The notes beneath the pieces were generated by a model. The model searched no databases. It saw nothing but the letters and a program-made list of their open reading frames with translations, and was not told the origin of the DNA. A DNA stretch of 64,000 nucleotides from positions 307,676 through 371,675 of IMG/VR virus record IMGVR_UViG_3300035212_003113; one strand, 5' to 3'. A program made the position numbers and the translations under genes. The stretch's first letter is position 1. The number at the start of each line of letters is the position of its first letter. Of the stretch, positions 42,952 through 61,899 are shown one piece after another.

Positions 42952-43201
42952 CCCTGAAATTTGCAAATTTTCCTAGCGTGCAATCCGCGTGCCACGCTAC
43001 CCCTCCGCCCCTATAACCCGCCAACCCCCGCCCAGGGGTTGCTTTCCTGTAAACGGCCAGGCAGCCGCCCGTAATAAAAGCGGCACAAATCTTGCCTATT
43101 ACTTTCCATTCCTTTCGGTCCTAAAGACATTCTTTCCTGATCCTGACGCGTGAGACAGGGACCCGTCCGTCAACCCCTTCCCCCTGTCTGTGAGGTAAGT
43201 C

Positions 43202-43612
43202 ATGACCACCACCATCACAGCCCGCGCCGCCTACGTTGCTACCGTAACCAAGACCGCGCTGGCGCTGGCCATCATGGCTCAAGAAGAATATCGCAAGGCG
43301 GTAGTGGAGGCGTTTGCCGCCTATGACGGCGGGCGCCCCGGCGCGGCGGCCGTCGCCGCCTTGCGGCGCGTGGCAGTCCGGCCCGCCACCGCCATTGAAA
43401 GCCGCCGCCCGGCGACGGAGACCGCCGCCCTTCTCGTGAACGCCTATGACGGCGGATACGACGCGGCGGAACGAGCCGCACGCCGTTGGGACATTGACGC
43501 CGTCGAGGGCGTCCCCTTCGCCGACCGGGTTGATGCCCGCCCATGGTTCCTTAATGTCATGCCTGATGGGACTGAGATGTGGCAGACGATTCCCGATGAC
43601 GTCGAGTTCTGA
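43202..43612 (+). CDS. cassette gene, Ala-rich hypothetical protein
   Basis: Preceded by element, leader L1 and GAGG; followed by hairpin and T-tract. Confidence 0.7.
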   Translation: MTTTITARAAYVATVTKTALALAIMAQEEYRKAVVEAFAAYDGGRPGAAAVAALRRVAVRPATAIESRRPATETAALLVNAYDGGYDAAERAARRWDIDAVEGVPFADRVDARPWFLNVMPDGTEMWQTIPDDVEF

Positions 43613-43771
43613 TGGCCGGGGCCGACCCTGCCCTGTCTGCCCCGGCTAGCCCGGGGCTTTTCTTTCACCGGGTTTCGAGCCGGGCCGGTCCTAAAAACAT
43701 TATCTTTTGATCCTGACGCGTGAGACAGGGATCAGTCCATCAACCCCTTCCCCCTGTCTGTGAGGTAAGTC

Positions 43772-44005
43772 ATGACCACCGCCGCCGTCACCACCGCCGC
43801 CCTCGCCGTCAACGCCCTCGCCGCCGCCCTCGATGCCGTCCGCGCCGCTCACGCCGCGTCACCGTCCTGCCCGGCGGCGGCCGCCGCGTTGGCGGTTACG
43901 GAGGCCGCGCTGGAACTCGCAAACCAAGGGCTCGACTCCGCCATCGGGGCGGATTCCATCGACTGGCGCCCGGGGCTTTGCGAGAGTCTCGTCGCCGGGG
44001 AATGA
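43772..44005 (+). CDS. cassette gene, Ala-rich hypothetical protein
   Basis: Preceded by element, leader L1 and GAGG. Confidence 0.7.
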   Translation: MTTAAVTTAALAVNALAAALDAVRAAHAASPSCPAAAAALAVTEAALELANQGLDSAIGADSIDWRPGLCESLVAGE

Positions 44006-44032
44006 CCCCGGCCTTCCCTCTCACCCTTCCGA

Positions 44033-44063
44033 CCCCGGCCACGCGCCGGGGTTTTTTTATTTT
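44033..44063 (+). terminator. intrinsic terminator, representative of cassette terminators
   Basis: CCCCGGC-CACGC-GCCGGGG plus T-tract; similar CCCCGGC..GCCGGGG+T hairpins near 44711, 45112, 48650, 49200. Confidence 0.8.
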
Positions 44064-44261
44064 CTGTCCGCCGTCGTCGCACGCCTATGTCACGGTCAAG
44101 GTCTAGGGCGGGGCGTCCCCGGCGCCAGCCCCGGCACGGGCCGGGGCTTTTCTTTTGCCCGGTCTCGAACCAGGCGAAATCCTAAAGACATTATCTTTTG
44201 ATCCTGTATGTCGAGACAGGGATCAGTCCATCAACCCCTTCCCCCTGTCTGTGAGGCCGTC

Positions 44262-44696
44262 ATGACCGCTTTCAATGACACGTTCCCCATCGTCGGCATG
44301 ACTGCCAAGTCCGTTGGACTCTGTAAGGACAAAGACGGCGGGGACGCCGTCCGATTCACGTTCGCGGACGGCAGCGAGTGGTTGATGCACCACTCGCGCA
44401 GCTGCTGCGAGTATGTTGGCCTCACGCAGGTCGACGGCGACCTGTGCGACCTTGTTAACTCCCCGCTCGTCATGGCGGAGTGCGCGGGCGAGATTGTCGA
44501 CGACATCGACGAGGACGGCCACTCGCTCGGAACAAGCGGTTGGACGTTCTACCGCTTCGCCACGGGGAAGGGCTACGTCACCCTGCGCTGGCAAGGCAAT
44601 AGCAACGGGTATTATTCAGTCGAGGTCTCTTTCTATCAGACGAAAGAGTCCGCGTCGATATCGTTCTATGATAACGACGACGACGACAACTACTAA
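44262..44696 (+). CDS. conserved phage hypothetical protein (CCE...WTFY...SNGYYS family)
   Basis: HHSRSCCEYV..VDGDLCDL, WTFYRFATGKGYVTLRWQGNSNGYYS; start re-called after GAGG. Confidence 0.75.
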   Translation: MTAFNDTFPIVGMTAKSVGLCKDKDGGDAVRFTFADGSEWLMHHSRSCCEYVGLTQVDGDLCDLVNSPLVMAECAGEIVDDIDEDGHSLGTSGWTFYRFATGKGYVTLRWQGNSNGYYSVEVSFYQTKESASISFYDNDDDDNY

Positions 44697-44828
44697 CCCG
44701 TAGTGAATCGCCCCGGCCCTGCCGGGGCTTTCGCTTTTCCGGGTTTCTTTCCCGGCCCCGGCCGGTCCTAAAGACATTATCTTTTGATCCTGATGCGCGG
44801 GACAATCCAGTCCCGTTTGGAGGCCGCC

Positions 44829-45089
44829 GTGACCATCCGCCGCACTGCTACCATCGTTGATGCCACCGCCGTCCGCACGGCGGTCATCGCCGCCCGTCTG
44901 CGGGCCGCCTACAGCGAGGCCGGTGACGCTGAGGCGGCCCGCATTCATCGGGGGCAGCTCGACGACGGTACGGTGGTGGTGGGGGTGCTTGACGCCCCTC
45001 CGCCCCCGCCGACGGAAGCGGAGTTGGTAGCGGAGCGCATCCGGGCGATGCGCGCCCGTATGGGTGGCGCGGCCCGCCCGCTCCGGTGA
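44829..45089 (+). CDS. cassette gene, hypothetical protein
   Basis: GTG start after GGAGG downstream of element 44764. Confidence 0.65.
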   Translation: MTIRRTATIVDATAVRTAVIAARLRAAYSEAGDAEAARIHRGQLDDGTVVVGVLDAPPPPPTEAELVAERIRAMRARMGGAARPLR

Positions 45090-45241
45090 ACCCGGCCCGC
45101 CGCTTCTCTCGCCCCGGCCCTGCCGGGGTTTTCTTTTGCCCGGTCTCGAGCCTGGCCCGTCCTAAAAACATTTCTTTTTGATCTTGTATGTCGAGACAGG
45201 GTCCAGTCCGTCAACCCCTTCCCCCTGTCTGTGAGGCAACC

Positions 45242-45604
45242 ATGAAGACCACCCGCGCCACCACCGCCGCCGTCAACGCCGCCATCGGGCGCGCCCACGC
45301 CCTCCTCTCCTTCGCCGCGCAAGCGGCTGAAGACGCCGACCTCGCCGCCACCACCGCCGCCGCCTACGGTGACGGCGGCGAAGCAGCCGCCTACGGAGCC
45401 GCCGCCGCCGCATGGGCGGCCAGCGGCGACGCCGCCGCCCGAAAGGGGGCAATCCTCGCCCCCCTCGTCGAGGGGGGGCGCATCACCCCCGCCCGCGCGG
45501 AGGAGGTGGTCAACGACCCCGCTTACTATCCCCTGGGGGACGAGGTCCTCCAAGACGAAGACGGAGTTTCCTACTCCGTCTGGGGGCACCCGGTTTACTG
45601 GTGA
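45242..45604 (+). CDS. cassette gene, Ala-rich hypothetical protein
   Basis: MKTTRATT after leader L1 and GAGG. Confidence 0.7.
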   Translation: MKTTRATTAAVNAAIGRAHALLSFAAQAAEDADLAATTAAAYGDGGEAAAYGAAAAAWAASGDAAARKGAILAPLVEGGRITPARAEEVVNDPAYYPLGDEVLQDEDGVSYSVWGHPVYW

Positions 45605-45742
45605 CCCCCGCCCCCCCGACCCCGCCCTAACCCGGCGGGGTTTCCGCTTTTCCGCTTTTCTTTCCCGGCCCCGGCCGGTCCTAAAAACATTTCTTTTTGA
45701 TCCTGTTAGATGTCAGAACAACCCGCAACACCCGGAGGCAGT

Positions 45743-45952
45743 ATGTCTAGCTATGACTGCATGTTTGAGCGCCTGAGCGCGGCTTCGGCCGCCGACAAGG
45801 CCGAGACCCCCACCGCCACCACTCCCGAGTGGCGCCTGCGGCCCACCCCGGGCCGGGACATCTGCTACTACTGCGGGACCGACAATGGCCCGCTTAGCGG
45901 GGAGTGCAGCTCCCGGCAAGGGCACGATTGCTATCACTGCGGCGGGAACTAA
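45743..45952 (+). CDS. cassette gene, small Zn-finger-like protein
   Basis: CYYCG...CSS...CYHCGG; GGAGG upstream. Confidence 0.65.
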   Translation: MSSYDCMFERLSAASAADKAETPTATTPEWRLRPTPGRDICYYCGTDNGPLSGECSSRQGHDCYHCGGN

Positions 45953-46092
45953 CTCCCGCCCATCGCCCCGCCCCGCCAGCAAGGCGGGGCCTTGCCGTTT
46001 TCTGCGTTTCTTTCCCGGCCCCGGCCGGTCCTAAAGACATTCTCTCTTGATCCTGTTAGGCGTCAGAACAACCCGCAACACCCGAGGCTCGC

Positions 46093-46425
46093 ATGGCGTT
46101 TGTGAACTTGACCCCCCACACCATCACCGTCGTCGACCAAGCGGGCGCGCCCGCGCTCGTCCTGCCCGCCGACGGGACCGTCGCCCGCGTGGCGACAAAG
46201 ACGGCCGTGGCCGCCGTCGTCGACGGCGTGGAGATTTTCGAAACCTCTTTCGGGGAGGTCGTCGGCCTCCCCGCGCCGGCCCCCGGCGTGACGTGGGTTG
46301 TCTCCGGCCTCGTCGCCGGACACCCGGCGGTGCGGGGCCGTACCGACGTCCTTTCCCCCGGGGCGCTTGTGCGCGGCCCCGATGGTCAGCCGGTTGGCTG
46401 CCGGGGCTTGAGCCGTCCCGCGTGA
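46093..46425 (+). CDS. conserved viral hypothetical protein (NLTPH family)
   Basis: NLTPHTIT...ARV...GLPAP...VVSGLVA...RTDVLSPG..VR..DG...GCRGL. Confidence 0.75.
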   Translation: MAFVNLTPHTITVVDQAGAPALVLPADGTVARVATKTAVAAVVDGVEIFETSFGEVVGLPAPAPGVTWVVSGLVAGHPAVRGRTDVLSPGALVRGPDGQPVGCRGLSRPA

Positions 46426-46539
46426 GCGGCTCCCCGGTCAATCGACCGGGCTGCCCGGCTCGTCACCCGTCCTAAAAACATTATCTTTTGATCCTGTTAG
46501 ACAGAAGCCGGAACGAAACAAACCGGCACGGAGGATACG

Positions 46540-47007
46540 ATGAAGACCCTGACGATTATGCGTGGCGTCCCCGGTAGCGGCAAGAGCACCCTTGCCAAGG
46601 TGCTCGCCAACGTCCCGGGCGTCGAGACGGCTCCCGTGTTTTCCACAGATGATTTTTTCATGGTCGATGGCGAGTACCGCTTCGACGGGTCGAAGCTCGG
46701 GGCCCACCACGCGGCCAACCTCCGCCGCACGGCGGAGGCGATGGAAGCCGGTGTTACCCACGTCATCGTGGACAACACTATGACTCAAGGATGGGAGGCG
46801 CGGGAATATGTCCGCGCCGCGACCTTCCACGGATACAGGGTGCAGTTCGTCGAGCCGCGCACGCCGTGGGGGCGGGACGCGGCGGAGTGCGCCGCCCGTA
46901 ACTCTCACGGGGTTCCCCTCGCCGCAATCGAGGGGATGCTGGCCCGGTGGGAGCCGGACCTCACCCCGGAAGCGTGCTTGAACGCCCGCGCCCCGTGGGA
47001 GGGGTGA
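46540..47007 (+). CDS. P-loop kinase, AAA_33/N4BP2-like
   Basis: MRGVPGSGKST, FSTDDFF, VIVDNT, HGVP...IEGML. Confidence 0.85.
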   Translation: MKTLTIMRGVPGSGKSTLAKVLANVPGVETAPVFSTDDFFMVDGEYRFDGSKLGAHHAANLRRTAEAMEAGVTHVIVDNTMTQGWEAREYVRAATFHGYRVQFVEPRTPWGRDAAECAARNSHGVPLAAIEGMLARWEPDLTPEACLNARAPWEG

Positions 47008-47110
47008 GAGATGCCCGGCGCCGGCCGGGCTCTTTCCCCGGCCGGTCCTAAAAACAGAAAGTTTTGATCCTGATAGGCAGAGCGGCAAACAACACGCCGC
47101 AGGAGGCAAC

Positions 47111-47425
47111 ATGCGTACCGAAACGACCCTCTCTGTTCGCATTGGAATCGTAAATGCCATGGCCCGCCGGGCCGGGGACGCGGGCCTGGCTGCCCGTGCA
47201 GATCAGGTCACGGATCTCGCCTTTGCCTTGCTCGCCATCGGCGGCGACGCCGGGCCGGTGGTGGAGGCACTGGCCAACCTCGCCGGAGAGTTGGAAACGG
47301 CGATGGTACGCCGTGGCTTCAACCGCCGCGAGATTCCGGCGGTTATCCGCCGGGACTGCGAAGCTGCCGGGCTGCCGGTGGCCGATGCCACGGTCACGGT
47401 CCGCAAGCCGGGGGTGGGGCTGTGA
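47111..47425 (+). CDS. cassette gene, hypothetical protein
   Basis: AGGAGG upstream; follows element 47044. Confidence 0.7.
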   Translation: MRTETTLSVRIGIVNAMARRAGDAGLAARADQVTDLAFALLAIGGDAGPVVEALANLAGELETAMVRRGFNRREIPAVIRRDCEAAGLPVADATVTVRKPGVGL

Positions 47426-47568
47426 AGCCGTGGAACATCCCTGACGACGAAACCGATAACCGCCCCGCCCGCATGGGCCGGGGCCGCCCGGCGGGTGAGT
47501 CGCCCCGCCCGACAAAGGGTCGTCCCCGCTCGTGGGATGCCCGCCGAAGGGAAAAGCGCCGCGACTAG
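47422..47568 (+). CDS. small Arg/Pro-rich peptide
   Basis: GTG overlapping the upstream stop; MKPWNIPDDETDN...WDARRREKRRD. Confidence 0.45.
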   Translation: MKPWNIPDDETDNRPARMGRGRPAGESPRPTKGRPRSWDARRREKRRD

Positions 47569-47650
47569 CGGACCGGGGGAGCAATCCCCCGCCCGCCTTC
47601 CGCCGGTCCTAAAAACATTCTTTTTTGATCTTGATAGGCAAGAGGTGAGT

Positions 47651-47749
47651 ATGACCCGCCGCGATGCTGCCGATGCGTTTTTCTTCCTTGCCGGTATGTT
47701 TGTTCTCGTGTTCGTCTATCCCGTCTTGTTCTACGGGATGGCGGGTTAG
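47651..47749 (+). CDS. 32-aa membrane peptide
   Basis: GAGGTG SD; MTRRDAADAFFFLAGMFVLVFVYPVLFYGMAG; has its own element (47605). Confidence 0.6.
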   Translation: MTRRDAADAFFFLAGMFVLVFVYPVLFYGMAG

Positions 47750-47825
47750 TCTCCGGGGCCGGTGCCCCCTTTCTCGCCGGTCCTAAAAACATTCTTTCCT
47801 GATCCTGTTAGTCACGGAGGCAGCG

Positions 47826-48038
47826 ATGAAAGACAAGGCTGGCAAGATGACGGTGACCTTTCCCGACGGCAGCAAGCTGACGGCCATGGCTCCGATGGGG
47901 CTCCCCGGTACGCTGGCCACGGTCGGATGGGAGGCCCACCGCGCCCGGGCGGCGATAGCCGAGATGGACATGACAAGTATTCAAAGGCTCCTGCGCCACT
48001 CCGATGCGCTGCGGGCGCTCCGGCAAGCGGGCTACTGA
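47826..48038 (+). CDS. cassette gene, hypothetical protein
   Basis: GGAGG SD after element 47779. Confidence 0.7.
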   Translation: MKDKAGKMTVTFPDGSKLTAMAPMGLPGTLATVGWEAHRARAAIAEMDMTSIQRLLRHSDALRALRQAGY

Positions 48039-48126
48039 TAAGGAATCGGGCCGGGGCTTGTCCCCGGTGCCGAGCCGGACCGGTCCTAAAAACATTCTTT
48101 TCTGATCCTAATAGGCGGAGGTCAGC

Positions 48127-48291
48127 ATGGCTCAATCGGTTCGGATTCGCATCGCTGGAAACTTCGGGCACGCGCTTTGCCTGTGCCCGGGGTGTTGTCC
48201 CCGTGGCGGCGGGGGCAAGGCGGCCGTCAAGCGCAAGACGGCGCGGGCCGTCCGGCGTTCCGAGCGCCGGGAGATCGAGACGGAGGATTAG
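48127..48291 (+). CDS. 54-aa Cys/basic peptide, missed by the ORF track
   Basis: GGAGG at 48117; MAQSVRIRIAGNFGHALCLCPGCCPRGGGGKAAVKRKTARAVRRSERREIETED. Confidence 0.65.
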   Translation: MAQSVRIRIAGNFGHALCLCPGCCPRGGGGKAAVKRKTARAVRRSERREIETED

Positions 48292-48370
48292 CCGTCCCGG
48301 CCCGGGGAGTCGCATCCCCGGTCCCGAACCTGCCCGGTCCTAAAAACATTATCTTTTGATCTTGATAAGC

Positions 48371-48628
48371 ATGAACAACAACGACAGCCTCACTGCCCGA
48401 TCCAACATCGTCGCGCTCCGGCGCGCCGACCGCGATGCGGCTGCCGCGCGCCGCGCGGGCTACGGAACTGACCGCGCCGCTTGGTGCGGCGTCGATGCCG
48501 GCCTTGCCAAGCTCATGACGGAGGCGGGCCTTTTCGCCCGCCTGCCCGCTGAGGCCCGCGAGCAGTGGGACGCCGGTTGTCTTTCCGCGTCGGAAGCTTT
48601 CGCTATCATCGGCGACGAACTATTTTAG
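48371..48628 (+). CDS. cassette gene, probably leaderless
   Basis: ATG falls exactly on the inferred +1 of element 48336; no SD. Confidence 0.65.
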   Translation: MNNNDSLTARSNIVALRRADRDAAAARRAGYGTDRAAWCGVDAGLAKLMTEAGLFARLPAEAREQWDAGCLSASEAFAIIGDELF

Positions 48629-48772
48629 TTCGCCGCCCACCCTTCCACCGCCCCGGCCCCGCCGGGGCTTTTCTTTTGCCAGGTCTCGAACCTGGCAGCG
48701 GTCCTAAAAACAGATATTTCTGATCCTGTTAGACATCGGAACGGCGGCACGGGCCGCACAACGGAGGATAGC

Positions 48773-49183
48773 ATGGCTTCGCAAAAGCGCTCTCTCGCCC
48801 TTGACATTCGTCTCGCTGGCATCGATTTCCCGTCGGACGTGGGCCGGGCGTTGGAGTTCTACGTTAACGGCAAGCTCCTGTTTCGTGGGGACCGTGCGGG
48901 ATTCGAGCGGCTCTGGGCCGCTCTCCCAAATATCCATGCCGCTTTCGGCGGGATGGAGTCTGAAGGCGTGCGCCCCTTCCGCACGGGGACCGTGCGCTTT
49001 CAGCCGGGCCGCAACCCGCAAGTCGGATACGTCTACACGTTGGAGGACGTGGCCGCCTGCATGCTGTTCCGTCATGAAGTCGAGGAAGCTCTTGACGGGC
49101 GCGGGGCGTTCCTGCCGGACGACGTGCTCGAAGATACTCACTCCTGCGCAGGGTGGGGATGTGTTTGTCACAGTGAGAGCTAG
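48773..49183 (+). CDS. cassette gene, hypothetical protein
   Basis: GGAGG SD after element 48700. Confidence 0.7.
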   Translation: MASQKRSLALDIRLAGIDFPSDVGRALEFYVNGKLLFRGDRAGFERLWAALPNIHAAFGGMESEGVRPFRTGTVRFQPGRNPQVGYVYTLEDVAACMLFRHEVEEALDGRGAFLPDDVLEDTHSCAGWGCVCHSES

Positions 49184-49339
49184 CCTCACAGCGGGCCTCG
49201 CCCGGCCCCGGCCTAATCAGCCGGGGTTTTTTTGTCTTTTTTTGCGGGCGTCATCGGTCCTAAAAACATAACTTTTTGATCCTGATAGGTGTCCAGCGGT
49301 TCCCGGCGCTCCTGCCGGCCCGCCCTGCCCGAGGTTAGC

Positions 49340-49648
49340 ATGACCAACGTCATCGGCATTATTCTCTCTACCGACTACGGCACCCTCGAAATCGAGGGGG
49401 TGGAGGCCGGCGCTCTTGCCCGCCTGCGCCGTGACCCGGTACTGGTCGCGGCCGTGGAGGCGGCCGACGACGACGCCTTTGCGGCTCGTCTCATCGACCT
49501 CCACCCGGAAGTGGCGGACTATGAGGTCCCGTCAACCGACTTCCTGCGGGTGACGCGCCTGCCCGCCGGCACCCGGTACGGGATTGTCATGGGCGACGGG
49601 GATACCGAAGCGCTCGTCTCGGAGCTTGACCTTACCGAGACGGCATGA
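49340..49648 (+). CDS. cassette gene, hypothetical protein
   Basis: GAGGT SD; MTNVIGIIL. Confidence 0.65.
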   Translation: MTNVIGIILSTDYGTLEIEGVEAGALARLRRDPVLVAAVEAADDDAFAARLIDLHPEVADYEVPSTDFLRVTRLPAGTRYGIVMGDGDTEALVSELDLTETA

Positions 49649-49743
49649 CCGTCCGGGCGGGGGCCGGGTTCACCCGGCTCCGCCCCTCTCCTCCCCGGTC
49701 CTAAAAACAGATTCTTTTGATCCTGTTAGACATGGAGGCCACG

Positions 49744-50010
49744 ATGAAGCTGACAAAGAAGGAAGCTCGCAACGTTCGCGTTCTCGCCGCGCAGCACGAC
49801 GGGTTGGACGTGCTCGCCAGTGCGGCGGGCATCGCCCGGGGCGACCGCTCGGTCGCTTACCCGGTGGAGAACCGGGGCCGGGTGGGTTGGTTCAAGCAGG
49901 TGTGCCACCTCGCCGGCCGCGAGACGGGTCGCAACCACTGGGTTGCGGCGGTGGTCCGCGCCAACCGTCCCGCTAACGCGGTGGCGATTCTCCGGGCGCT
50001 CGAAGACTAG
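49744..50010 (+). CDS. cassette gene, hypothetical protein
   Basis: GGAGG SD; an in-frame ATG at 49732 also sits on the inferred +1. Confidence 0.7.
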   Translation: MKLTKKEARNVRVLAAQHDGLDVLASAAGIARGDRSVAYPVENRGRVGWFKQVCHLAGRETGRNHWVAAVVRANRPANAVAILRALED

Positions 50011-50192
50011 CGGGTGACGGGCCGGGGCGCGTAGCCCCGGACCCGAGCCTACCGGTCCTAAAAACAGATTCTTTTGATCCTGTTAGACAGAACGGCGGCG
50101 ACGAAACGATACGATGCGCCGCACATAACGGGTTAAACGTAGCGCCGGTGGTCGGCGGTACGCTAGGCCCTAGAAACAAAAGGGAAAGCACA

Positions 50193-50705
50193 ATGTCGCT
50201 CATCAAGTTTGGTTCCAACACCGGCAACTCTGGCAACACCCTTGCTCTCCCCGCTCCCCGTGTGACGGCGCCCGCCCCTATGGCGCCGATGCCTCTCCCG
50301 GCGCCGGTCGCTGCGACGAGCACGAGCCCGGACATTGCGGCTCTTATGGCGAGGCTTGCGGCGGCCGAGGCGGGGCTCGCTACAGAGAAGGCCCGGGCCG
50401 ATGCGGCCGAGGCTGCCCGTGCGGCGAGTGGCGGTAGCCGTGGATACAGCATGAAGGCGTCGGAGAAGGGCGCTATCTCGATCTACGGCGTCTCTACCAA
50501 GTTCCCGGTGACGCTCTACGCTCCCCACCTCGTGGGAATCATCCGTGATCTGGTTATGACCGGCAAGGCGTCGGCGTTCCTCCGGGAGAATGCGGCGAAG
50601 CTTTCGGTCAAGGTCGACGGCACGGGCCAGGCGGGCACGGGTGCTTCGGAATCGGCAGTGCGCAGCCTTGCCGATGAGCTTGATCGGGTCACCCGCAAGG
50701 CGTGA
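50193..50705 (+). CDS. MSLIK paralogue 1 (coiled coil + SEKGAISIYG..FPVTLY domain)
   Basis: Near-colinear similarity to 53453..53896 and 54869..55297. Confidence 0.8.
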   Translation: MSLIKFGSNTGNSGNTLALPAPRVTAPAPMAPMPLPAPVAATSTSPDIAALMARLAAAEAGLATEKARADAAEAARAASGGSRGYSMKASEKGAISIYGVSTKFPVTLYAPHLVGIIRDLVMTGKASAFLRENAAKLSVKVDGTGQAGTGASESAVRSLADELDRVTRKA

Positions 50706-50826
50706 ACGGTAGGAAGGGGGCCGGGTTCGCCCGGCCCTTTCCTTCCCCGCCGGTCCTAAAAACAGATTCTTTTGATCCTGTTAGACAAGCGGCGACGACG
50801 AAACAAACGCCGCGAATGGAGACGCG

Positions 50827-51219
50827 ATGCGCAAGCAGTCTGCTCGTTCCCTCACCCTTGCTCTTTCCCGTGCCGCTGCTGACGTGCTTGTCGGCAAGCT
50901 GTCAAGCCTTAACTATGGGAATACCACCACGCCGGGGCCGCGTCAAACGGCCATCCTCGCAGATATTGCCCGCCGCAAGGCAACCCGGCGCGGGCGTCGG
51001 GCTGCTACTGCCGCTGAGATTGCGGAAACGCAAGGCATCCCGGTCTCCAACGTGGAGCGGGCGCTGTCCTGTCTCCGGTGCCGTGGCCTTGTCGACCGCC
51101 GGGGCACCCGGTTCGGCCTTACCATCCGGGGGACGGAAGCTGCCGCCCTGTTCTCCGGGGTGCAGGTGCCCGACGGCATCGGGCTGGTCCTGACTGGTCA
51201 TGCTATCCGCAAGGTGTGA
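50827..51219 (+). CDS. winged helix-turn-helix protein
   Basis: RQTAILADI...TAAEIAETQGIPVSNVERALSCLRCRGLV...LTIRG. Confidence 0.75.
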   Translation: MRKQSARSLTLALSRAAADVLVGKLSSLNYGNTTTPGPRQTAILADIARRKATRRGRRAATAAEIAETQGIPVSNVERALSCLRCRGLVDRRGTRFGLTIRGTEAAALFSGVQVPDGIGLVLTGHAIRKV

Positions 51220-51320
51220 CCGTCCGGGGCGGGTCGGGGGAGAAATCCCCCGGCCTTTCCTTCCGGCCCCGGTCCTAAAGACATACTTACCTGATCCTGA
51301 TAAGCACAACGGAGGCCGGT

Positions 51321-51515
51321 ATGAAAAGCAAGTTTTCTTGCCCTACTTGTAAGCAACGCCCTGCGTGTGACTGTGCACCCCCGGACTATGCCCGGATGCG
51401 CCGGGAAAGCGAGCATGCACCGTCGACTGCCGTCTATGTTGCCGCCCTGCAACGTGCATGGGAGCACCGTGCGATGATGCTCGAAGCGGACGAGACCCGC
51501 GACCACCGCGATTAG
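51321..51515 (+). CDS. small Cys-rich protein
   Basis: CPTC...CDC; GGAGG SD. Confidence 0.65.
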   Translation: MKSKFSCPTCKQRPACDCAPPDYARMRRESEHAPSTAVYVAALQRAWEHRAMMLEADETRDHRD

Positions 51516-51533
51516 CGGGTAGGAGGACTGCGC

Positions 51534-51716
51534 ATGAAAGAGCTTTTCTTTTGCATTGATCAGGAACACGTTGATGCCGGGGAGTTCCTGCCCGGCGAGA
51601 TCGGGCACTGGGCAGTGCGCGGACTCCCCGGCGGGGTGCTCGTATTCAACAACCGCTATCTAGCCGAACTGGTGTGGGCGGGTATCGCACCTCACCACGG
51701 CTACGCTCACAACTAG
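51534..51716 (+). CDS. hypothetical protein
   Basis: AGGAGG SD. Confidence 0.65.
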   Translation: MKELFFCIDQEHVDAGEFLPGEIGHWAVRGLPGGVLVFNNRYLAELVWAGIAPHHGYAHN

Positions 51717-51795
51717 GGGATCGGGGCGGACACCTGCCCCTTTCCTTCCCGGTCCTAAAAGCATACCGGGCCGATCTTGATAGCCGGGAGGCACG

Positions 51796-51987
51796 ATGGA
51801 ACGGCTCCGACAAACGCTCCGGGCGTTGTTCGCCCCGCCGCATTATCCGCCCGGCTATGCGCCGGTGTCCGGTCATGCGGTGCATTCATACGAGAAAAAC
51901 TATTTTCTGGCGGACACGCGCCGCCGTGCGAGGGTAGCCTATGAAGCCGCGAAACGCAATCTTGTTGCAGATGATCCTAACCCGTAA
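51796..51987 (+). CDS. cassette gene, hypothetical protein
   Basis: GGAGG SD after element 51751. Confidence 0.65.
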   Translation: MERLRQTLRALFAPPHYPPGYAPVSGHAVHSYEKNYFLADTRRRARVAYEAAKRNLVADDPNP

Positions 51988-52178
51988 AGGCGGGGTCATG
52001 CGCGACCGCAAGGCGGAATCGAAACGCCGGGCGTGCCGGGGGCGAGTCCGCCGGGACCGCGACGACGAGTGACCGGCTGGGGCGCCAGCCCCACCTGGCT
52101 CGCGACCGGTCCTAAAAACATACTCCTCTGATCCTGTATAGCAGAAGCCGGAACGAAACCAACTAGCAGGAGGCAGCT

Positions 52179-52472
52179 ATGTCCAAGGTTCACTTCAACA
52201 CCGGTCGTCTTTATGGTCCCCATGGTCAACGCATCGTGGCTATGCAGTGCCCTTCCGGCGAAGTTGTGTTCGTTGACCGGGACCGGGGCATCCTAGGTGC
52301 CTTGACTGAAAAGTCGGGGGAGATGGGCGCCAACACCGGAGGCGTCAAGGTGTTCCCGCCGTTGACGGCGGCGCAGGTACAGGCGGAAGTCAGTCGCCGC
52401 TATGTCGGCAGCTACGCTTATCAAAGCAGCTCACTGGCCTACCAGTTTGAGGCGCAGCTTCTCGCGGACTGA
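52179..52472 (+). CDS. cassette gene, hypothetical protein
   Basis: AGGAGG SD after element 52108. Confidence 0.7.
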   Translation: MSKVHFNTGRLYGPHGQRIVAMQCPSGEVVFVDRDRGILGALTEKSGEMGANTGGVKVFPPLTAAQVQAEVSRRYVGSYAYQSSSLAYQFEAQLLAD

Positions 52473-52556
52473 GGTCCGGCCCCGCACGCGCGGGGTTCTT
52501 TGCTGAGCCGGTCCTAAAAACAGATTCTTTTGATCTTGTTAGACACGGAGGCGACG

Positions 52557-52850
52557 ATGCGCAGCAGCGAGCAGGTTTTCGTGGCAGTCGTTTCAACCTC
52601 CCGCCACTTTGGCGGGCATGAGGAAGGCGGCTGGTGGTTCGACTGGTCGAATGTAGAAAAGGCGTGGTCTTTTGACAACCCGCGCCGGGCGCGCCGGTTT
52701 GCCCGGCGGCTGGAACGCGAGGAAGCGCATTACGCGCCGCGTCATGACCGCTTCTCGGTTCTCGGCGGGACCGATGTAGAAGTCCGCCGCACGCGGGACC
52801 CGGAAGCACTCGCCGAATGGCAGAGCCGGCAGCGCCCGCGATACGAGTGA
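52557..52850 (+). CDS. cassette gene, hypothetical protein (GGxEEGGWW motif)
   Basis: GGAGG SD; FGGHEEGGWWFD. Confidence 0.7.
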   Translation: MRSSEQVFVAVVSTSRHFGGHEEGGWWFDWSNVEKAWSFDNPRRARRFARRLEREEAHYAPRHDRFSVLGGTDVEVRRTRDPEALAEWQSRQRPRYE

Positions 52851-52945
52851 GCGGACAACGGACCGGGGCCTAGCTCCGGTCCCGAGTCCGGCCGGTCCTA
52901 AAAACATAAACTTTTGATCCTGATAGGTGCCACAACGGAGGCTGC

Positions 52946-53146
52946 ATGCAGGTGACGGAGATTGCGATTGACGGCAACGGCAACGCGACGGTGAACGCCC
53001 GCGAGGGCGGGATGGAAGCGGCGCTCGCCCGCGCCCCGTGGGCGCTGCGGGGATGGGCGGCGGAACGCTGCAATCTGGAAATGACGGGGCGGGAGTACCT
53101 GACCCGCCGCGCCGAGATGCTGCGGGCGCTGGCGGACGTCCGCTAG
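52946..53146 (+). CDS. cassette gene, hypothetical protein
   Basis: GGAGG SD after element 52894. Confidence 0.7.
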   Translation: MQVTEIAIDGNGNATVNAREGGMEAALARAPWALRGWAAERCNLEMTGREYLTRRAEMLRALADVR

Positions 53147-53452
53147 GGGACGGGGTGCCGGGGGGGCACCTGACTCCGGACCGGGCCTAAAAACATACTC
53201 CTCTGATCTTGTCCCGCATACGTGGGAGGTGTGCCATGCGGGGCTAAAAGATTGCAAAACTTATCTGCAAGGGCCAACGGCGAGTCCGGGGGCGGGCGTC
53301 CTATTGTCCGAAAAGCGCGGTCGCCACCGGTCCTAAAAACAGCTTCCCCTGATCTTGTAGGGTGTCCCGGCGACGACGCCGCGACGCAGCGCCGATGACG
53401 CAGCGCCCGATGGTCGGGGGTTGCGGATAGGCTAGAACGCAGGATACAAGCC

Positions 53453-53896
53453 ATGTCGCTTATCAAGCTCCCCGCCCCTGTCGCCGCCACCGTTGCCACG
53501 CCCGTCACGGCGCCGTCTCTGTCTCCTGACATTGCCGCGCTCATGGCCCGCCTCGCAGCGGCGGAAGCTGCGGTCGCGACGGAAAAGGCCCGCGCCGACG
53601 CCGCTGAAAAGGTCAAGGCGGAGTCGCGGGGTTATTCTGCGAAGGCATCGGAAAAGGGCGCGGTTTCCATCTACGGGGTTAGCGCCCGCTTCCCTGTCAC
53701 GCTGTATGCCCCGCACTTTGTCGGGGTGTGCCTTGACCTTATCATGACGGATAAGGGGGTCAACTTCCTGCGTGAAAACGCGGATAAGTTGTCTGTCAAG
53801 GTGGACGGCACCGGGCAGGCCGGGACGGAGGCGAGCCGGGCGGAAGTGCTGCGCCTCGCAGACCGGCTGGCCGGTGCGGTTGCCCGCCTGAAGTGA
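53453..53896 (+). CDS. MSLIK paralogue 2
   Basis: SPDIAALMARL...KASEKGAVSIYGVSARFPVTLYAPH. Confidence 0.8.
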   Translation: MSLIKLPAPVAATVATPVTAPSLSPDIAALMARLAAAEAAVATEKARADAAEKVKAESRGYSAKASEKGAVSIYGVSARFPVTLYAPHFVGVCLDLIMTDKGVNFLRENADKLSVKVDGTGQAGTEASRAEVLRLADRLAGAVARLK

Positions 53897-54868
53897 GGCG
53901 GGCCGGGGGTGGGCGGGGCGACCCGCCTGCCCCTTTTCCGGCGACCGGCGCCCGGCCGGACCCGCCGGGTTCGCCACCGGCCCTAAAAACATACTCGCCT
54001 GATCCTGTAGGACGTACTCTGGTGACAAACCGGGGCGGGCGAACTATTCCTTTTTTTATTGCCCGGCGCGGGGCAGTCCGGTCGTCGGTCCTAAAAACAT
54101 ACGCCGACGATCCTGACAGACGGGTCAACGGGACAACCGGGGGCGGGATAGGTGCGTCGATTGCAAGAAAAAACCGGGGAACAATAACAGGATCGGGAAA
54201 GCCCGTTTTTAGGACCGGGATTGCCTGCAAAGTTTATGCCCCTTTTTATTGTGCCGGTCCTAAAAACAGCTTCTCCCGATCCTGTTACGCGTCAACGCTA
54301 TAGTCGGGGGCGGGGAGAGGTGTATCCGGTGGATTAGTTATGTGGACAAAAGATCCGTTTTGTTTTTGCGTTTTATGATAGCTGACAGGGGCCGGCGGTC
54401 CTAAAGACGGAGTCCGCCGATCCTGTAACCTGCGTCAACGGGACAACCGGGGACGGGTGCGGTGTGCCTAGTGGCTTTGTAATGCTGATGCAATGTTTGC
54501 AGGATCTTTTCTATCTGTTATTAGGATTGCGGCTTCAGTCCTAAAGACGGTGTTGTGTGATCCTGTTGTGCTTTTACTGATTCTGGCTTTCCCTAACGGT
54601 AGAGAGCTGGGAGATAACTTTATAATCTTTAGCAGGCCGCCCGGGCTTGCTGGATAGCTATTGTCTCGCGCGCGTTGATAGGGATGCTTGGTAGGTTGCT
54701 AGATAGTACCTGCTAGAAAGCAGTTTTTCTTGACAGGGGGCGGCGGTCCTAAAGTCGGGGTCCGCCGATCCTGTAGAGCAGAACGGCGGCCCACTACATA
54801 GCCGCAAAGGTGAAGCGTTATACCCGGTGGTCGGGTATCTCGTGGAGCCTAAATACAGGGAGAGCATC

Positions 54869-55297
54869 ATGTCGCTCATCAAGGTCGGAACCCCCGTCGC
54901 CAACAACACCGTCACCTCTGTCAGCCCGGATGTGGCAGCTCTCATGGAGCGTCTCAAGGCTGCCGAGGCTGCGCTGGCAGCAGAGAAGGCCCGTGCCGAT
55001 GCTGCTACCAAGACTAAGGGCGAGGCGCGTGGTTACACCGCCAAGGCCAGCGAGAAGGGTGCTATCAGCATCTACGGTGTGTCCGCTCGCTTTCCTGTCA
55101 CGGTCTACGCTCCCCACTTTGTGGGGATTGCGCTGGACCTCATCATGACCGACAAGGGAGTGGCGTTTCTCCGGGAGAACGCTGATAAGCTCTCTGTCAA
55201 GGTGGATGGTACCGGGACCGCTGGTACCGAGGCTAGCCGTGCCGAGGTTCTCCGGCTGGCTGACCGTCTCGCTGAAGCTGTCGCCAAGCTGAAGTGA
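54869..55297 (+). CDS. MSLIK paralogue 3
   Basis: SPDVAALMERL...KASEKGAISIYGVSARFPVTVYAPH; start re-called. Confidence 0.8.
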   Translation: MSLIKVGTPVANNTVTSVSPDVAALMERLKAAEAALAAEKARADAATKTKGEARGYTAKASEKGAISIYGVSARFPVTVYAPHFVGIALDLIMTDKGVAFLRENADKLSVKVDGTGTAGTEASRAEVLRLADRLAEAVAKLK

Positions 55298-55658
55298 GGC
55301 AGGCAGGTGGGGGCCGGGATAACCCGGCTCCCTTTCCTGTTAGAATGACAGCTTACCCCTACACAGGTGGCAATAATGCTGCGCTTTTTGGAACTTCCTC
55401 CTAGCCGTCCTGACGTCGAGCCTACGTGGACGGAGTGTATTGCGATGGCCTTTCAATGTGCCCGCTTTGCGCCGCTCGAAGCGGACAGGGCACGGGCCAT
55501 GCATGCTGCCTGTAGCTGGTTAGAAAAAGGCTTGTTTTGGCTTGATTGAAGCCACTACCGGGGAGGGGCGACTCTCCCCGGTACCTACAACCTGCAACAC
55601 ACCTGCCAACGGGACAACCGGGGGCGGGCGATCTATTCGCGCGCGCGTTGTGTGCTCC

Positions 55659-56025
55659 GGTCCTAAAAACAGCGATTTCTGATCCTGATACAGTTGCCCC
55701 TCTGTCAGGCAGAGGATTGCAGCGTTCCGGTCCTAAAGACGGGTGTTGCTGATCCTGTAGGGGTTTGCCGATTGCCTGCAATCCTCTGCCCTTGCTCCGT
55801 CCTAAAGACGGGGATCTGTGATCCTGTATCGGTTTGACCTGTGTGTGTCTATATACTTGTTTCTATGTGAAACGCGCCGGTCCTAAAAACAGATTCTTTT
55901 GATCCTGTCGCCCTTTGTCTTTTTGTCAACTTCACGCGGTCCTAAAAACATACTCGCCTGATCCTGTTAGCATTTTCTTTTTTCTAGACTCGCTCCAGTC
56001 CTAAAGACGGTGTGCCCTGATCCTG
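55659..56025 (+). repeat. ORF-free cluster of six 29-bp elements with 30-52-bp gaps
   Basis: Starts 55659, 55729, 55798, 55879, 55938, 55997; gaps 41, 40, 52, 30, 30. Confidence 0.9.
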
Positions 56026-56281
56026 TCCCGGTTGCCCCGCTGTTTGCTTCTTCTCTCTTTTTCTTGTGCCTAGAGCGGCTGGCCTATTGCCGGCAGACAA
56101 CCGCTTTGCAGCGTTTACCCGTCTGAAGAATAATGGGCAAAAGATACCAAGGGAACCGCCACCACCCACCGGGAGCTAAAACCTCTCTTGATGCCGGTAT
56201 TACAGCTGTACTAAGTATTAGACAGCTGCTAGTTGACCCGCGCCGGCTCTAAAGCCGGGTATGCCGCTGTATGGAGTTGTC

Positions 56282-56776
56282 ATGAAACTTGACAAAGTCG
56301 CGCTGTCTTATGCAAGATCCAGCGAAGAAGCTATATCTATACTAACAGAGAGCAGACCAGAGTTTGTCCCGCTGCTGCATCCTGATGATTTGCGTAAGAT
56401 AACAAAATATATTGTTGCCTGCAATAACCATAATCATAAAGTCTTCAAGGTTACTATACCCCTGTTTGCTTGGTACGAGCATAGGATATGGCCAGATCCT
56501 TCTGCCTTTCCTAGCAGCACAGGAATCATTTACTCTATCATGGTGTGGGTAAAGTCTCCAAAAAGAGTTCTGAAAAAGAACTTCACTCTTTTGTATCCAT
56601 TTGATCTGGGTTCTAATGCCGCATTAGACAGGGAAAGCATAAAGGAAATAATCCGATTGAAGGTAGAGAAAATAGAGAGTATGAAGGTTAGCTATAAGGC
56701 TGCCGCTGATAAGCTAAAGAATATGGCAATCGTGACAATCGGGGCCGGGCCTAAAGTCGGGTCCGGCCGATCCTGA
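56282..56776 (+). CDS. MKL-signature protein inside the cassette array
   Basis: MKLDKVAL after GGAG; stop codon lies at the right end of element 56747. Confidence 0.65.
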   Translation: MKLDKVALSYARSSEEAISILTESRPEFVPLLHPDDLRKITKYIVACNNHNHKVFKVTIPLFAWYEHRIWPDPSAFPSSTGIIYSIMVWVKSPKRVLKKNFTLLYPFDLGSNAALDRESIKEIIRLKVEKIESMKVSYKAAADKLKNMAIVTIGAGPKVGSGRS

Positions 56777-56891
56777 GGGACGACCGACGAACCGCCGCAG
56801 CATACAGGATGCGGTGGATCTAACAGTAGCGCCGGTCCTAAAGCCGGTGTCCCCCGATCCTGTAGGACGAACCGCAAACCCCGGAGACGCC

Positions 56892-57200
56892 ATGACCCTG
56901 CCTATTGTTGGTGAGAAGCCCGCTCATACCGGCAGCCTGTCGGAGATTCGTACTTGGATGCGTGCTCCTAGCACCCGTGATGCCTGGATGGCACAGAATG
57001 TACTGCTGGGTGGTGCGTTCGCTACCTACATGGCAGACCAAGAGCCTGACGATGTTCGCCGAGTTTTTTGCATTGAGCCTGTCTGTCAGTTGAAGGAGGA
57101 TGCGGGCATCCGTGGTCGTGGTATCCACCTGTTTGCTCTGAAGGACTTTGAAGACGCGCTGTGGACTGGGTTTGCCGCTACCATCAACCGCCGTCGCTGA
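56892..57200 (+). CDS. cassette gene, hypothetical protein
   Basis: GGAG SD after element 56834. Confidence 0.65.
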   Translation: MTLPIVGEKPAHTGSLSEIRTWMRAPSTRDAWMAQNVLLGGAFATYMADQEPDDVRRVFCIEPVCQLKEDAGIRGRGIHLFALKDFEDALWTGFAATINRRR

Positions 57201-57219
57201 AGCCCTGACAGGAGACAAC

Positions 57220-57714: not shown

Positions 57715-57764
57715 TCCTAAAGACGGTTTATCCCGATCCTGTAACCTGTAACCCCGGAGATCCT

Positions 57765-58226: not shown

Positions 58227-58571
58227 GAATGACATGAGCAAGCCTATTGTTCATGCCGGACGAGCATTGGCACTTAGTCCGGCACAGGCAGATGCCGCCA
58301 TTAGTGGATAGCTAAAGGTGGCACTTGCCTACCGGCAAGGTCGTAAGCGCCGCATTCGTAAAGGACTATTGCGGGTTTATGGTTGCCCTTGCTGTGGTAT
58401 ATTTGCAGATGTCATCGGCGTCAACACGCAGCGCCGCTATGTCAACTTCACAAATCTTTTCTCCCTCTTTCGTGATCGACTGATACCAGCCCATGACTGA
58501 GGGGGCCGGGCCTAAAGCCGGTGCCGCCCGATCCTGTAGGTCGACCGCCACACCCCAACAACGGAGTCAGT

Positions 58572-59177: not shown

Positions 59178-59257
59178 CAAGTAATCGGTTGCTGCCGACG
59201 GACAGCAAGTGGTTTGCACGTTCCGCAAAAAAACGTGCGCTTTTTACCGGGAGAGCT

Positions 59258-60011: not shown

Positions 60012-60035
60012 TGATCCGAGCGAAAGAAGAAAATC

Positions 60036-61845: not shown

Positions 61846-61899
61846 ACACCAACAGCGCGACCTCGCGCCTCTACGGGCTGGACGGGTACCGGAGAAACC

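What the first reader, a model, noticed from the sequence alone, without database searches (positions are those of the whole stretch)
43117..52160. Cassettes look shuffled: upstream and leader blocks recombine across the element
Seen: upstream block U1 (TTTTCTTTTGCC[C/A]GGTCTCGA[A/G]CC[A/T]GG) precedes 44178, 45158 and 48700. Block U2 (TTTCTTTCCCGGCCCCGGCC at 44744, 45657, 46007) precedes 44764, 45677 and 46027. The same CCCCGGCCCTGCCGGGG terminator occurs at 44711 and 45112. Downstream leaders assort partly independently: U1 pairs with L1 twice but with another leader at 48700; U2 pairs with L2 twice but with a unique leader at 44764; L1 also follows other upstream blocks at 43117 and 43687. 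The ORFs behind shared blocks are unrelated. Established: promoter-stem-loop cassettes (PeSL) drive modular shuffling in T4-type phages. Inference: the element is also a crossover point, making a plug-and-play accessory gene array.
Basis: partly seen in the sequence, partly recalled or inferred. Interest (0 to 1): 0.7.

Follow-up and report, generated by a model that had tools for sequence, protein, structure and literature searches.

The report
Shuffled promoter-terminator gene cassettes, jumbo phage
A lake-water giant phage carries a GC-rich row of about 25 tiny genes, each with its own phage-specific promoter, leader and terminator, and comparison with related phages shows that these units are gained, lost, moved and re-paired at the repeated regulatory sequences, much like the PeSL cassettes of T4-type phages.

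Summary
Blocks U1, U2, L1 and L2 and the shared terminator sit at the stated coordinates. None is expected by chance. The ORFs behind them are unrelated.

The region is part of a 13-kb array in a 371.7-kb uncultivated lake-water jumbo phage. The array is 65% GC against 49% elsewhere. It holds about 25 single-gene units: a bipartite promoter-like motif (GGTCCTAAAAACA-N9-GATCCTG), a leader, a small ORF and an intrinsic terminator. U1 and U2 are terminator tails. L1 and L2 are 5'-UTR families, L1 with a stem-loop.

The relaxed motif occurs 77 times forward and once reverse in the genome.

Related metagenomic phages share the design but not the order:
- Cassettes are inserted, lost or moved one at a time.
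- In the closest informative pair, all nine homology breaks lie within -12 to +24 nt of the promoter.
- One ORF has three different leaders in three phages.
- Promoters are homogenised within each genome.

The phage encodes RecA/UvsX-like and UvsW proteins and no tyrosine integrase.

This is a PeSL-like system with a non-sigma-70 promoter in an unrelated phage lineage. Excised circles could not be tested. In passing: orthologue GC3 tracks position in or out of the array.

The parts
43117..53978 (+). Core array: 25 co-oriented single-gene cassettes, about 65% GC, ORF GC3 0.78. Each is promoter, leader, small ORF, terminator.
43117..43686 (+). Cassette 1: promoter 43117-43149, L1 leader (core 43152-43195), ORF 43202-43612 (136 aa, ORFan), terminator 43639-43657, U1-like tail 43650-43685.
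43687..44177 (+). Cassette 2: promoter, L1 leader, ORF 43772-44005 (77 aa, Ala-rich), terminators 44031-44053 and 44127-44148, U1 44148-44174.
44178..44763 (+). Cassette 3: promoter variant (AATCCTAAAGACA), L1 leader, ORF 44262-44696 (DUF7448), terminator 44710-44728, U2 44744-44763.
44764..45157 (+). Cassette 4: promoter, unique stem-loop leader, ORF 44829-45089 (GTG start, 86 aa), terminator 45111-45129, U1 45129-45155.
45158..45676 (+). Cassette 5: promoter, L1 leader, ORF 45242-45604 (120 aa), U2 45657-45676.
45677..46026 (+). Cassette 6: promoter, L2 leader, ORF 45743-45952 (69 aa, Cys-rich), hairpin 45979-45995, U2 46007-46026.
46027..46467 (+). Cassette 7: promoter, L2 leader, ORF 46093-46425 (110 aa). 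The same ORF carries two other leader types in relatives L011 and L021.
46468..47043 (+). Cassette 8: promoter, leader with GCCGG/CCGGC stem and A-rich loop, ORF 46540-47007 (AAA_33 / polynucleotide-kinase-like P-loop protein).
47044..48699 (+). Cassettes 9-13, with promoters at 47044, 47605, 47779, 48082 and 48336. ORFs: 47111-47425, 47422-47568, 47651-47749 (32 aa, hydrophobic), 47826-48038, 48127-48291, 48371-48628. Cassette 13 has only 9 nt between the motif and its ATG. Terminator 48650-48668, U1 48669-48695.
48700..50053 (+). Cassettes 14-16, with promoters at 48700, 49256 and 49697. ORFs: 48773-49183, 49340-49648, 49744-50010. Terminator 49204-49228. The 49256 leader is 'type 0', shared with unrelated ORFs in relatives.
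50054..50751 (+). Cassette 17: promoter, 113-nt structured leader, MSLIK paralogue a (50193-50705).
50752..52160 (+). Cassettes 18-21 (start), with promoters at 50752, 51271, 51751 and 52108. ORFs: 50827-51219 (winged-HTH-like), 51321-51515, 51534-51716, 51796-51987, 51941-52072.
52108..53978 (+). Cassettes 21-25, with promoters at 52108, 52510, 52894, 53183 and 53329. ORFs: 52179-52472, 52557-52850, 52946-53146. MSLIK paralogue b (53453-53896) has a 98-nt leader.
53979..56030 (+). Promoter-dense zone with almost no ORFs: about 14 motif copies 60-170 bp apart, one of them reversed at 54216. It also holds MSLIK paralogue c (54869-55297) and the small conserved hairpin motif at 54126, 54436 and 55607.
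56747..63790 (+). Genome-type promoters with a GC-rich spacer (GGCCCTAAAGCCGG-N8-CGATCCTG) at 56747, 56834, 57713, 60404, 62405, 63357 and 63759. They lie in front of ordinary genes that stay collinear in relatives.

Best explanation
The finding lies in a hyperplastic array of autonomous expression cassettes in an uncultivated 371.7-kb lake-water jumbo phage. Each cassette has four parts. First is a phage-specific bipartite promoter, whose conserved core is CCTAAA-N13-GATCC. In this genome's array it reads GGTCCTAAAAACA-N9-GATCCTG(T/A)TAG. Second is a leader: either about 20 nt with only a Shine-Dalgarno site, or a longer family such as L1 (a 5' stem-loop) or L2 (no stable fold predicted). Third is one small ORF, usually an ORFan. 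Fourth is a GC hairpin plus T-run terminator, sometimes with a second hairpin tail (U1 or U2). Because these 20-116-nt regulatory modules are repeated about every 400 bp in one orientation, they serve as substrates for homologous recombination and short-tract gene conversion. The phage's own RecA/UvsX-like and UvsW proteins probably carry this out. The outcomes are deletion, insertion, replacement and transposition of single cassettes. ORFs are also re-paired with other leaders, and promoters are homogenised within a genome. Shown here: the anatomy, its conservation in relatives, variable cassette order, breaks at the promoter, leader swapping and concerted promoter evolution. Inferred: that the motif is a promoter, which polymerase or sigma factor reads it, early timing of expression, homologous recombination as the mechanism, and any circular intermediate.
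For: Motif: 33 copies in the window against 0.28 expected. The relaxed form occurs 77 times forward and once reverse in the genome, against 0.35 in shuffles, and 42 of those copies lie in 13 kb. It is the most repeated 12-mer family in the genome. It always lies between a + strand terminator and a Shine-Dalgarno/ATG. Terminator-like sites number 20 against 10.5 +/- 2.6 in shuffles. No sigma-70-type site lies in the leader position. Independent assemblies confirm the layout: L014 is 95% identical and collinear over 7.3 kb, and six lake metagenome runs hold 94-99% of the sampled words. Relatives L011, L018 and L021 have the same GC-rich array with their own promoter flavour. Cassette order differs while flanking genes stay collinear. 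In L018 against L021, two replacements occur and 9 of 9 block ends lie within -12 to +24 nt of the motif. Leader and ORF re-assort. Family w46093 has L2 in the window, type 6 in L011 and type 0 in L021. Families w46540, x7, x15, w47111 and w50827 also switch leaders. Nucleotide homology for w46093 and w46540 starts at the ATG. Orthologous promoters differ by 11.8-14.5 of 33 nt between the window and the three relatives (5.5-8.0 among the relatives), against 4.5-8.0 between non-orthologous promoters within one genome. The four L1 copies show all three possible 2-2 site patterns within about 70 nt. A RecA/UvsX-like gene and UvsW are present, and no tyrosine integrase was found.
Against: There are no RNA data, so promoter function, start sites and timing are unproven (one search found no RNA holders). 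No RNA polymerase was detected by Pfam, though the T7-type model also failed its controls. Only weak sigma-like ORFs were found. At 95% identity no cassette event is seen over 17 cassettes, so turnover is not very fast. Block ends near promoters are partly expected, because promoters are the only sequence shared by non-homologous cassettes. No recombinant junctions or circles could be shown. The apparent joints in the Logan contigs are cross-mapped promoter copies. One apparent indel, L011 against L015, was a 100-N scaffold gap.
Confidence: 0.72

Rival explanations
1. Regulatory constraint only. The shared blocks exist because every gene needs the same promoter, a terminator and a stabilising leader. 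Rearrangements arise by ordinary illegitimate recombination, and selection keeps only events that fall between genes. The repeats are not preferred crossover sites.
For: The promoter core is conserved across all relatives, which implies functional constraint. Block ends at promoters are partly an alignment effect. No junction molecules were seen.
Against: Constraint does not explain arbitrary sequence being shared. That includes 116 nt of L1, the U1 and U2 tails, and genome-specific promoter spacers that differ between phages yet are uniform within each one. It also does not explain mosaic L1 copies, or leader swaps whose homology ends exactly at the ATG.
Confidence: 0.17
2. Tandem duplication and divergence. 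Cassettes that share blocks are old duplicates whose ORFs have diverged beyond recognition.
For: The MSLIK trio are true paralogues at 66-79% identity. The L1 cassettes are neighbours.
Against: Leaders at 64-85% identity sit beside ORFs with no detectable similarity. One L1-driven ORF is a DUF7448 protein whose homologues in relatives L016 and L019 lie outside arrays without L1. Orthologous ORFs carry different leaders in different phages.
Confidence: 0.06
3. Site-specific cassette capture, integron-like or by a dedicated recombinase that recognises the hairpin or promoter as an attachment site.
For: The layout is a one-gene-per-unit array with a hairpin between units. Integron-like elements have been reported in phages (PMC9892861, abstract seen).
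Against: The genome has no tyrosine recombinase, while the controls were positive. The hairpins are followed by T runs, as in intrinsic terminators. Every unit has its own promoter, unlike integron cassettes.
Confidence: 0.03
4. Assembly artefact: a chimeric or mis-ordered metagenomic contig across short repeats.
For: The repeats break k=31 unitigs and one scaffold.
Against: The same order was recovered independently in L014 and in six runs. L011's order is seen in more than 10 other contigs. The repeats are far shorter than the assemblers' final k.
Confidence: 0.02

Closest known systems
PeSL (promoter-early stem-loop) cassettes of T4-type phages (Arbiol et al. 2010, PMC2839356; Comeau et al. 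2014, PMC4122927)
   Same: Both are composite terminator-plus-promoter repeats of about 100 bp in front of small ORFans, concentrated in a hyperplastic region. Indels and replacements between related phages are bounded by the repeats. Both are proposed to act through homologous recombination, and each shuffled gene carries its own expression signals.
   Different: The promoter here is not sigma-70-like (CCTAAA-N13-GATCC). The phage is an unrelated, uncultivated jumbo phage. The modules are three separable parts (terminator tail, promoter, 5'-UTR leader) that re-assort independently. The promoter flavour is homogenised per genome. The array is a sharp GC-rich island. Mini-circles have not been shown.
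Single-gene early transcription units of large lytic phages (for example T4 early genes, in which each small gene has its own promoter)
   Same: Many small co-oriented genes of unknown function, each with a strong promoter.
   Different: Timing here is only inferred. The promoter consensus is phage-specific and is shared with about 30 further genes over the next 125 kb.
Integron cassette arrays
   Same: One gene per unit, variable content and order, and a structured element between units.
   Different: There is no integrase and no attC-like site. Each unit has its own promoter and terminator.

Membership tests
PeSL cassettes (T4-type phages) | Strong sigma-70-like early promoter (-35 and -10 boxes with an AT-rich upstream region) | tested here: not met
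   The sigma-70 scan finds no + strand site in the leader position. The conserved motif is CCTAAA-N13-GATCC.
PeSL cassettes (T4-type phages) | Stem-loop that can terminate or attenuate upstream transcription, as part of the same intergenic unit | tested here: met
   GC hairpins plus a T run lie on the + strand 10-45 nt upstream of the promoters, 20 sites against 10.5 +/- 2.6 in shuffles. Termination itself was not assayed.
PeSL cassettes (T4-type phages) | Concentrated in hyperplastic regions, directly upstream of ORFans | tested here: met
   42 of 77 motif copies lie in 13 kb. Most array ORFs have no Pfam or PHROG match.
PeSL cassettes (T4-type phages) | Insertions, deletions and replacements between related phages are bounded by the motif | tested here: met
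   In L018 against L021, 9 of 9 block ends lie within -12 to +24 nt of the motif. Single cassettes have moved between the window and L011, L018 and L021.
PeSL cassettes (T4-type phages) | Excised mini-circles carrying one ORF and a chimeric motif | not testable with these tools
   Only k=31 Logan contigs were available, and the apparent joints are cross-mapped promoter copies.
PeSL cassettes (T4-type phages) | Host genome is a T4-like myovirus | tested here: not met
   DnaB and the tubulin-like protein are at most 25% identical to any cultured phage, Bacillus phage G being the best hit. There is no megablast hit.
Integron | Tyrosine-recombinase integrase | tested here: not met
   PF00589 gives no match in the genome, while the controls were positive.
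Integron | Promoterless cassettes read from a single Pc promoter | tested here: not met
   Every cassette has its own promoter motif and is preceded by a terminator.

The most novel reading that the evidence does not exclude
The array may be more than a shuffling site. It may be a compartment with its own composition-driving process. Orthologues of the same gene family have GC3 of about 0.8 inside the array and 0.45-0.64 outside it. Codon positions 1 and 2 and the amino-acid make-up shift in the same direction. This would fit GC-biased gene conversion driven by the intense repeat-mediated recombination. It would equally fit selection for host-like GC in the first genes expressed, for example to use the host tRNA pool or to escape AT-targeting silencers. 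Either would be a new link between recombination or expression timing and base composition inside one phage genome.
Probability: 0.25. Interest if true: 0.8.

Novelty: new variant of a known kind. Interest (0 to 1): 0.6.

Why it matters
PeSL-type modular shuffling has been documented only in T4-like phages that use host sigma-70 promoters. This array shows the same evolutionary device in a deep-branching, uncultivated freshwater jumbo phage lineage with a different promoter. That suggests repeated expression signals are a general way for large phages to keep a plug-and-play store of small accessory genes.

The system is unusually clean for study. It has about 25 units, three separable module classes, several natural relatives and a compositional signature. 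It could be used to measure cassette turnover, gene conversion tract lengths and ORFan capture. It also supplies a defined promoter, leader and terminator parts list for an unknown transcription system.

Tried and rejected
- **Megablast against cultured phages:** the region gave no hit.
- **Exact promoter pattern in viral contigs:** no hit.
- **Single-protein search for related loci:** the MSLIK query found nothing, and the flanking 458-aa gene gave only one weak hit, L010. Relatives came instead from the search for homologous proteins followed by the look-up of encoding contigs.
- **L011 against L015 'cassette deletion':** rejected, because it is a 100-N scaffold gap that starts right after a promoter.
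- **Read laying, used twice:** only k=31 contigs were available. All joints had short sides of 39 nt or less and sat at promoter copies. One carried the spacer of the tandem promoters at 55.9 kb, so these are cross-mapping and not recombinants. Zero depth over g44262 and part of g45743 in the riverine runs may mean those cassettes are absent from a 90-95% relative, but this is not conclusive.
- **The 2397-aa ORF upstream:** tested as a possible virion RNA polymerase. It is collagen- or tail-fibre-like.
- **RNA polymerase searches:** T7-like RNAP and the RNAP beta domain gave no hits. The T7-type model also failed its controls.
- **Rfam and tRNA scans of the array:** nothing significant.
- **MSLIK structure model:** pLDDT 81, but no PDB fold match.
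- **Individual leader folds:** not more stable than shuffles, with z between -2.1 and +1.7. L2 in particular folds weakly (-1.9 and -3.8 kcal/mol). Support for structure comes only from a few compensatory changes.


Full report
**1. Context**

The window is the last 64 kb of a 371,675-bp IMG/VR virus record. The record's 127-bp terminal repeat looks like an assembly overlap.

The genome is about 49-50% GC. It encodes a tubulin/TubZ-like protein, UvsW, DnaB and ribonucleotide reductase, a RecA/UvsX-like protein and five tRNAs.

It has no close cultured relative. DnaB and the tubulin-like protein are at most 25% identical to any cultured phage, with Bacillus phage G the best hit. The record is found in lake-water and riverine metagenomes.

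The finding lies inside the sharpest compositional anomaly of the genome. This is a block of about 65% GC at window positions 43.0-54 kb.

**2. Check of the observation**

Every block is present at the stated place, and none is expected by chance:
- U1 matches three times exactly.
- U2 matches three times exactly.
- The 44-nt L1 core matches four times.
- The L1 family extends to 116 nt. The U2+promoter+L2 family and a wider U1 family of five copies also appear.
- The shared terminator hairpin is at 44710 and 45111.

The pairings between upstream blocks and leaders are as described. The ORFs behind shared blocks show no similarity to each other. The only paralogues among 30 array ORFs are three 'MSLIK' proteins.

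**3. Anatomy**

In this array it reads GGTCCTAAAAACA-N9-GATCCTG(T/A)TAG. Within one mismatch it occurs 33 times in the window, against 0.28 expected.

The relaxed core, [C/A]CTAAA-N13-GATC, occurs 77 times forward and once reverse in the genome, against 0.35 in shuffles. Forty-two copies lie in 13 kb. The rest occur at 2-3 per 10 kb from 364 kb, across the record's end, to about 125 kb. It is the most repeated 12-mer family of the genome.

The copies outside the array carry a GC-rich spacer (GGCCCTAAAGCCGG-N8-CGATCCTG). The array copies carry an AT-rich one.

Each array copy sits 10-45 nt after a + strand GC hairpin with a T run. Terminator-like sites number 20, against 10.5 +/- 2.6 in shuffles. 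Each copy also sits 9-125 nt before an ATG or GTG, mostly with a GGAGG site.

No sigma-70-type site occupies these positions. I therefore read the motif as a phage-specific promoter. This is an inference, because no RNA data were available.

The polymerase is unknown. No T7-like polymerase or beta-subunit domain was detected, though the T7-type model also failed its controls. Weak sigma-like ORFs exist elsewhere in the genome.

The leaders fall into classes:
- About 20 nt with only a Shine-Dalgarno site.
- 40-60 nt, mostly with a 5'-proximal stem-loop. L1 belongs here, as do several with a GC stem and an A-rich loop. L2 is also in this size class, but no stable fold is predicted for it (-1.9 and -3.8 kcal/mol).
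- About 100-nt structured leaders in front of the MSLIK genes.

A few compensatory changes support the stems. Single-sequence stability is not above shuffles.

U1 and U2 are the T-run tail of a terminator plus a short second hairpin that abuts the promoter.

Most ORFs are ORFans. The exceptions are a DUF7448 protein, an AAA_33/polynucleotide-kinase-like protein and a winged-HTH-like protein.

**4. Relatives**

The MSLIK protein has more than 80 strong metagenomic clusters. Contigs that encode them gave the following loci:
- L014 is 95% identical to window 46699-54022 and collinear with it.
- L011 and L015.
- L018.
- L021 and L022.
- More distant loci L012, L013, L016, L017 and L019.

L011, L018 and L021 show the same design. 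Each has a GC-rich array (0.60-0.69) of small co-oriented genes. Each gene lies behind the same promoter core, in that genome's own flavour, and behind repeated terminators and leaders.

**5. Tests of the shuffling idea**

*(a) Gene order.* Seventeen array families are shared by the window and L011, but only about 3-4 of 16 adjacencies are kept. The differences amount to single-cassette moves plus unique cassettes in each genome. The genes just after the array (56814, 57220, 57765, 58572) are collinear in all relatives. L018 and L021 show further single-cassette moves. In L021 the AAA_33 gene lies outside the array.

*(b) Break points.* L018 and L021 are about 86% identical and differ by two cassette replacements. 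All nine homology-block ends inside the array lie within -12 to +24 nt of the promoter motif. The replaced unit is leader, ORF(s) and terminator hairpin. The retained flanks are the T run plus promoter. This is partly expected, because promoters are the only shared sequence there. The resolution is therefore 'the regulatory repeat', not a specific base.

*(c) Leader and ORF re-assortment.* ORF family w46093, at 84% amino-acid identity, has L2 in the window, a different stem-loop leader in L011 and a third in L021. Nucleotide homology begins at the ATG. Families w46540, x7, x15, w47111 and w50827 behave likewise. Conversely, one leader type precedes four unrelated ORF families. L1 occurs only in this genome, four times.

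*(d) Concerted evolution.* Promoters of orthologous cassettes differ by 11.8-14.5 of 33 positions between the window and the relatives (5.5-8.0 among the relatives). Non-orthologous promoters within one genome differ by only 4.5-8.0.

*(e) Mosaic copies.* The four L1 cassettes show all three possible two-by-two site patterns within about 70 nt. This points to short conversion tracts.

*(f) Machinery.* RecA/UvsX-like and UvsW genes are present. No tyrosine integrase was found.

*(g) Rate.* At 95% identity (L014) no cassette event is seen over 17 cassettes.

**6. What could not be shown**

Circles and recombinant junctions could not be shown. Only k=31 contigs were available for the holder runs. 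Their 'joints' are cross-mapped promoter copies. One apparent indel was a scaffold gap at a promoter repeat.

**7. Comparison with known systems**

The closest known system is the PeSL of T4-type phages. It is a composite of a sigma-70-like early promoter and a terminator stem-loop in hyperplastic regions. It bounds indels between close relatives and yields mini-circles (PMC2839356, sections read; PMC4122927).

This array shares the composite terminator/promoter repeat, the association with ORFans, the hyperplastic setting and repeat-bounded replacements.

It fails two features: the sigma-70-type promoter and the T4-like genome. Mini-circles are untested. It therefore works like a PeSL system but is not a member of that family.

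An integron-like reading fails on both the integrase and the promoterless-cassette criteria.

**8. Side finding on composition**

Array ORFs have GC3 of 0.78, against 0.49 for core genes. They are enriched in Ala, Arg and Gly.

Within gene families, GC3 follows location:
- AAA_33 is 0.80-0.84 in arrays and 0.55 outside.
- DUF7448 is 0.81 against 0.61-0.64.
- Family w47826 is about 0.80 against 0.60.
- Family w51941 is 0.80 against 0.45.

Across 200 genes in 54 families, family-centred GC3 correlates with flanking GC (Spearman 0.50, p = 8e-14, slope 1.27). GC at codon positions 1 and 2 also follows, more weakly.

The phage tRNAs read ACA, AGU and UUA-type codons. These codons are used in core genes and avoided in the array.

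The cause is open. Candidates are biased gene conversion, or selection for host-like composition of the first expressed genes.

**9. Verdict**

This is a new variant of a known kind. Interest is moderate to high: 0.6.

Noticed in passing
window 43000-54000 against the rest of the genome; relatives L011, L018, L021: The array is a conserved GC-rich island, and orthologue GC3 depends on whether the gene sits inside or outside the array. Examples: AAA_33 0.80-0.84 against 0.55; DUF7448 0.81 against 0.61-0.64. The within-family correlation with flanking GC is rho 0.50, p = 8e-14.
   Followed up: partly
window 53979-56030: A promoter-dense zone with almost no ORFs: about 14 motif copies 60-170 bp apart, one of them reversed at 54216. 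The same zone exists in L011, L018, L021 and L019. It may make short non-coding transcripts or serve another DNA-level role.
   Followed up: partly
window 54126, 54436, 55607 (variant at 53273); 3-6 copies in each of L011, L018, L019 and L021: A conserved 22-nt motif, CAACG-N-GACAA-N'-CGGGGGCGGG, in which N and N' covary (G/C, C/G, T/A, and TC/GA). This indicates a tiny hairpin. It lies either about 12-16 nt after a promoter or right after a T run. It has no Rfam match.
   Followed up: partly
window 50193-50705, 53453-53896, 54869-55297: Three 'MSLIK' paralogues at 66-79% identity, each behind a 98-113-nt structured leader. The trio is conserved in all relatives, and the family has more than 80 metagenomic clusters. 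The AlphaFold model (pLDDT 81) has no PDB fold match.
   Followed up: yes
window 42712-42936: Tandem repeats directly upstream of the first array promoter: an 80-bp unit in 2.2 copies, plus 10- and 20-bp sub-repeats. A weakly similar stretch occupies the same position in L018.
   Followed up: partly
window 48336-48373: Cassette 13 has only 9 nt between the end of the promoter motif and its ATG, and no Shine-Dalgarno site. Its mRNA may be leaderless.
   Followed up: no
genome 12482-35886 (outside the window): Five phage tRNAs: Thr-UGU, Met, Ser-ACU, Leu-UAA and Gln-CUG. Most read A/U-ending codons, which the core genes use and the array avoids. This hints at a host richer in GC than the phage.
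   Followed up: partly
genome 177957-178745, about 206.1 kb and about 22.8 kb (outside the window): ORFs resembling sigma factors (region 2 plus ECF-type region 4, weak; region 4 above the Pfam cut-off). They are candidates for reading the CCTAAA-N13-GATCC motif.
   Followed up: partly
window 33844-41037: A 2397-aa ORF with collagen-like repeats and tail-fibre PHROG matches ends about 2 kb before the array.
   Followed up: yes
window 10182-11528: A tubulin/TubZ-like gene. Its only match among cultured phages is Bacillus phage G, at 25% identity.
   Followed up: partly
L015 2993-3092: A 100-N scaffold gap begins exactly after a promoter plus leader start. The repeats disturb assemblies, which can mimic cassette indels.
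   Followed up: yes
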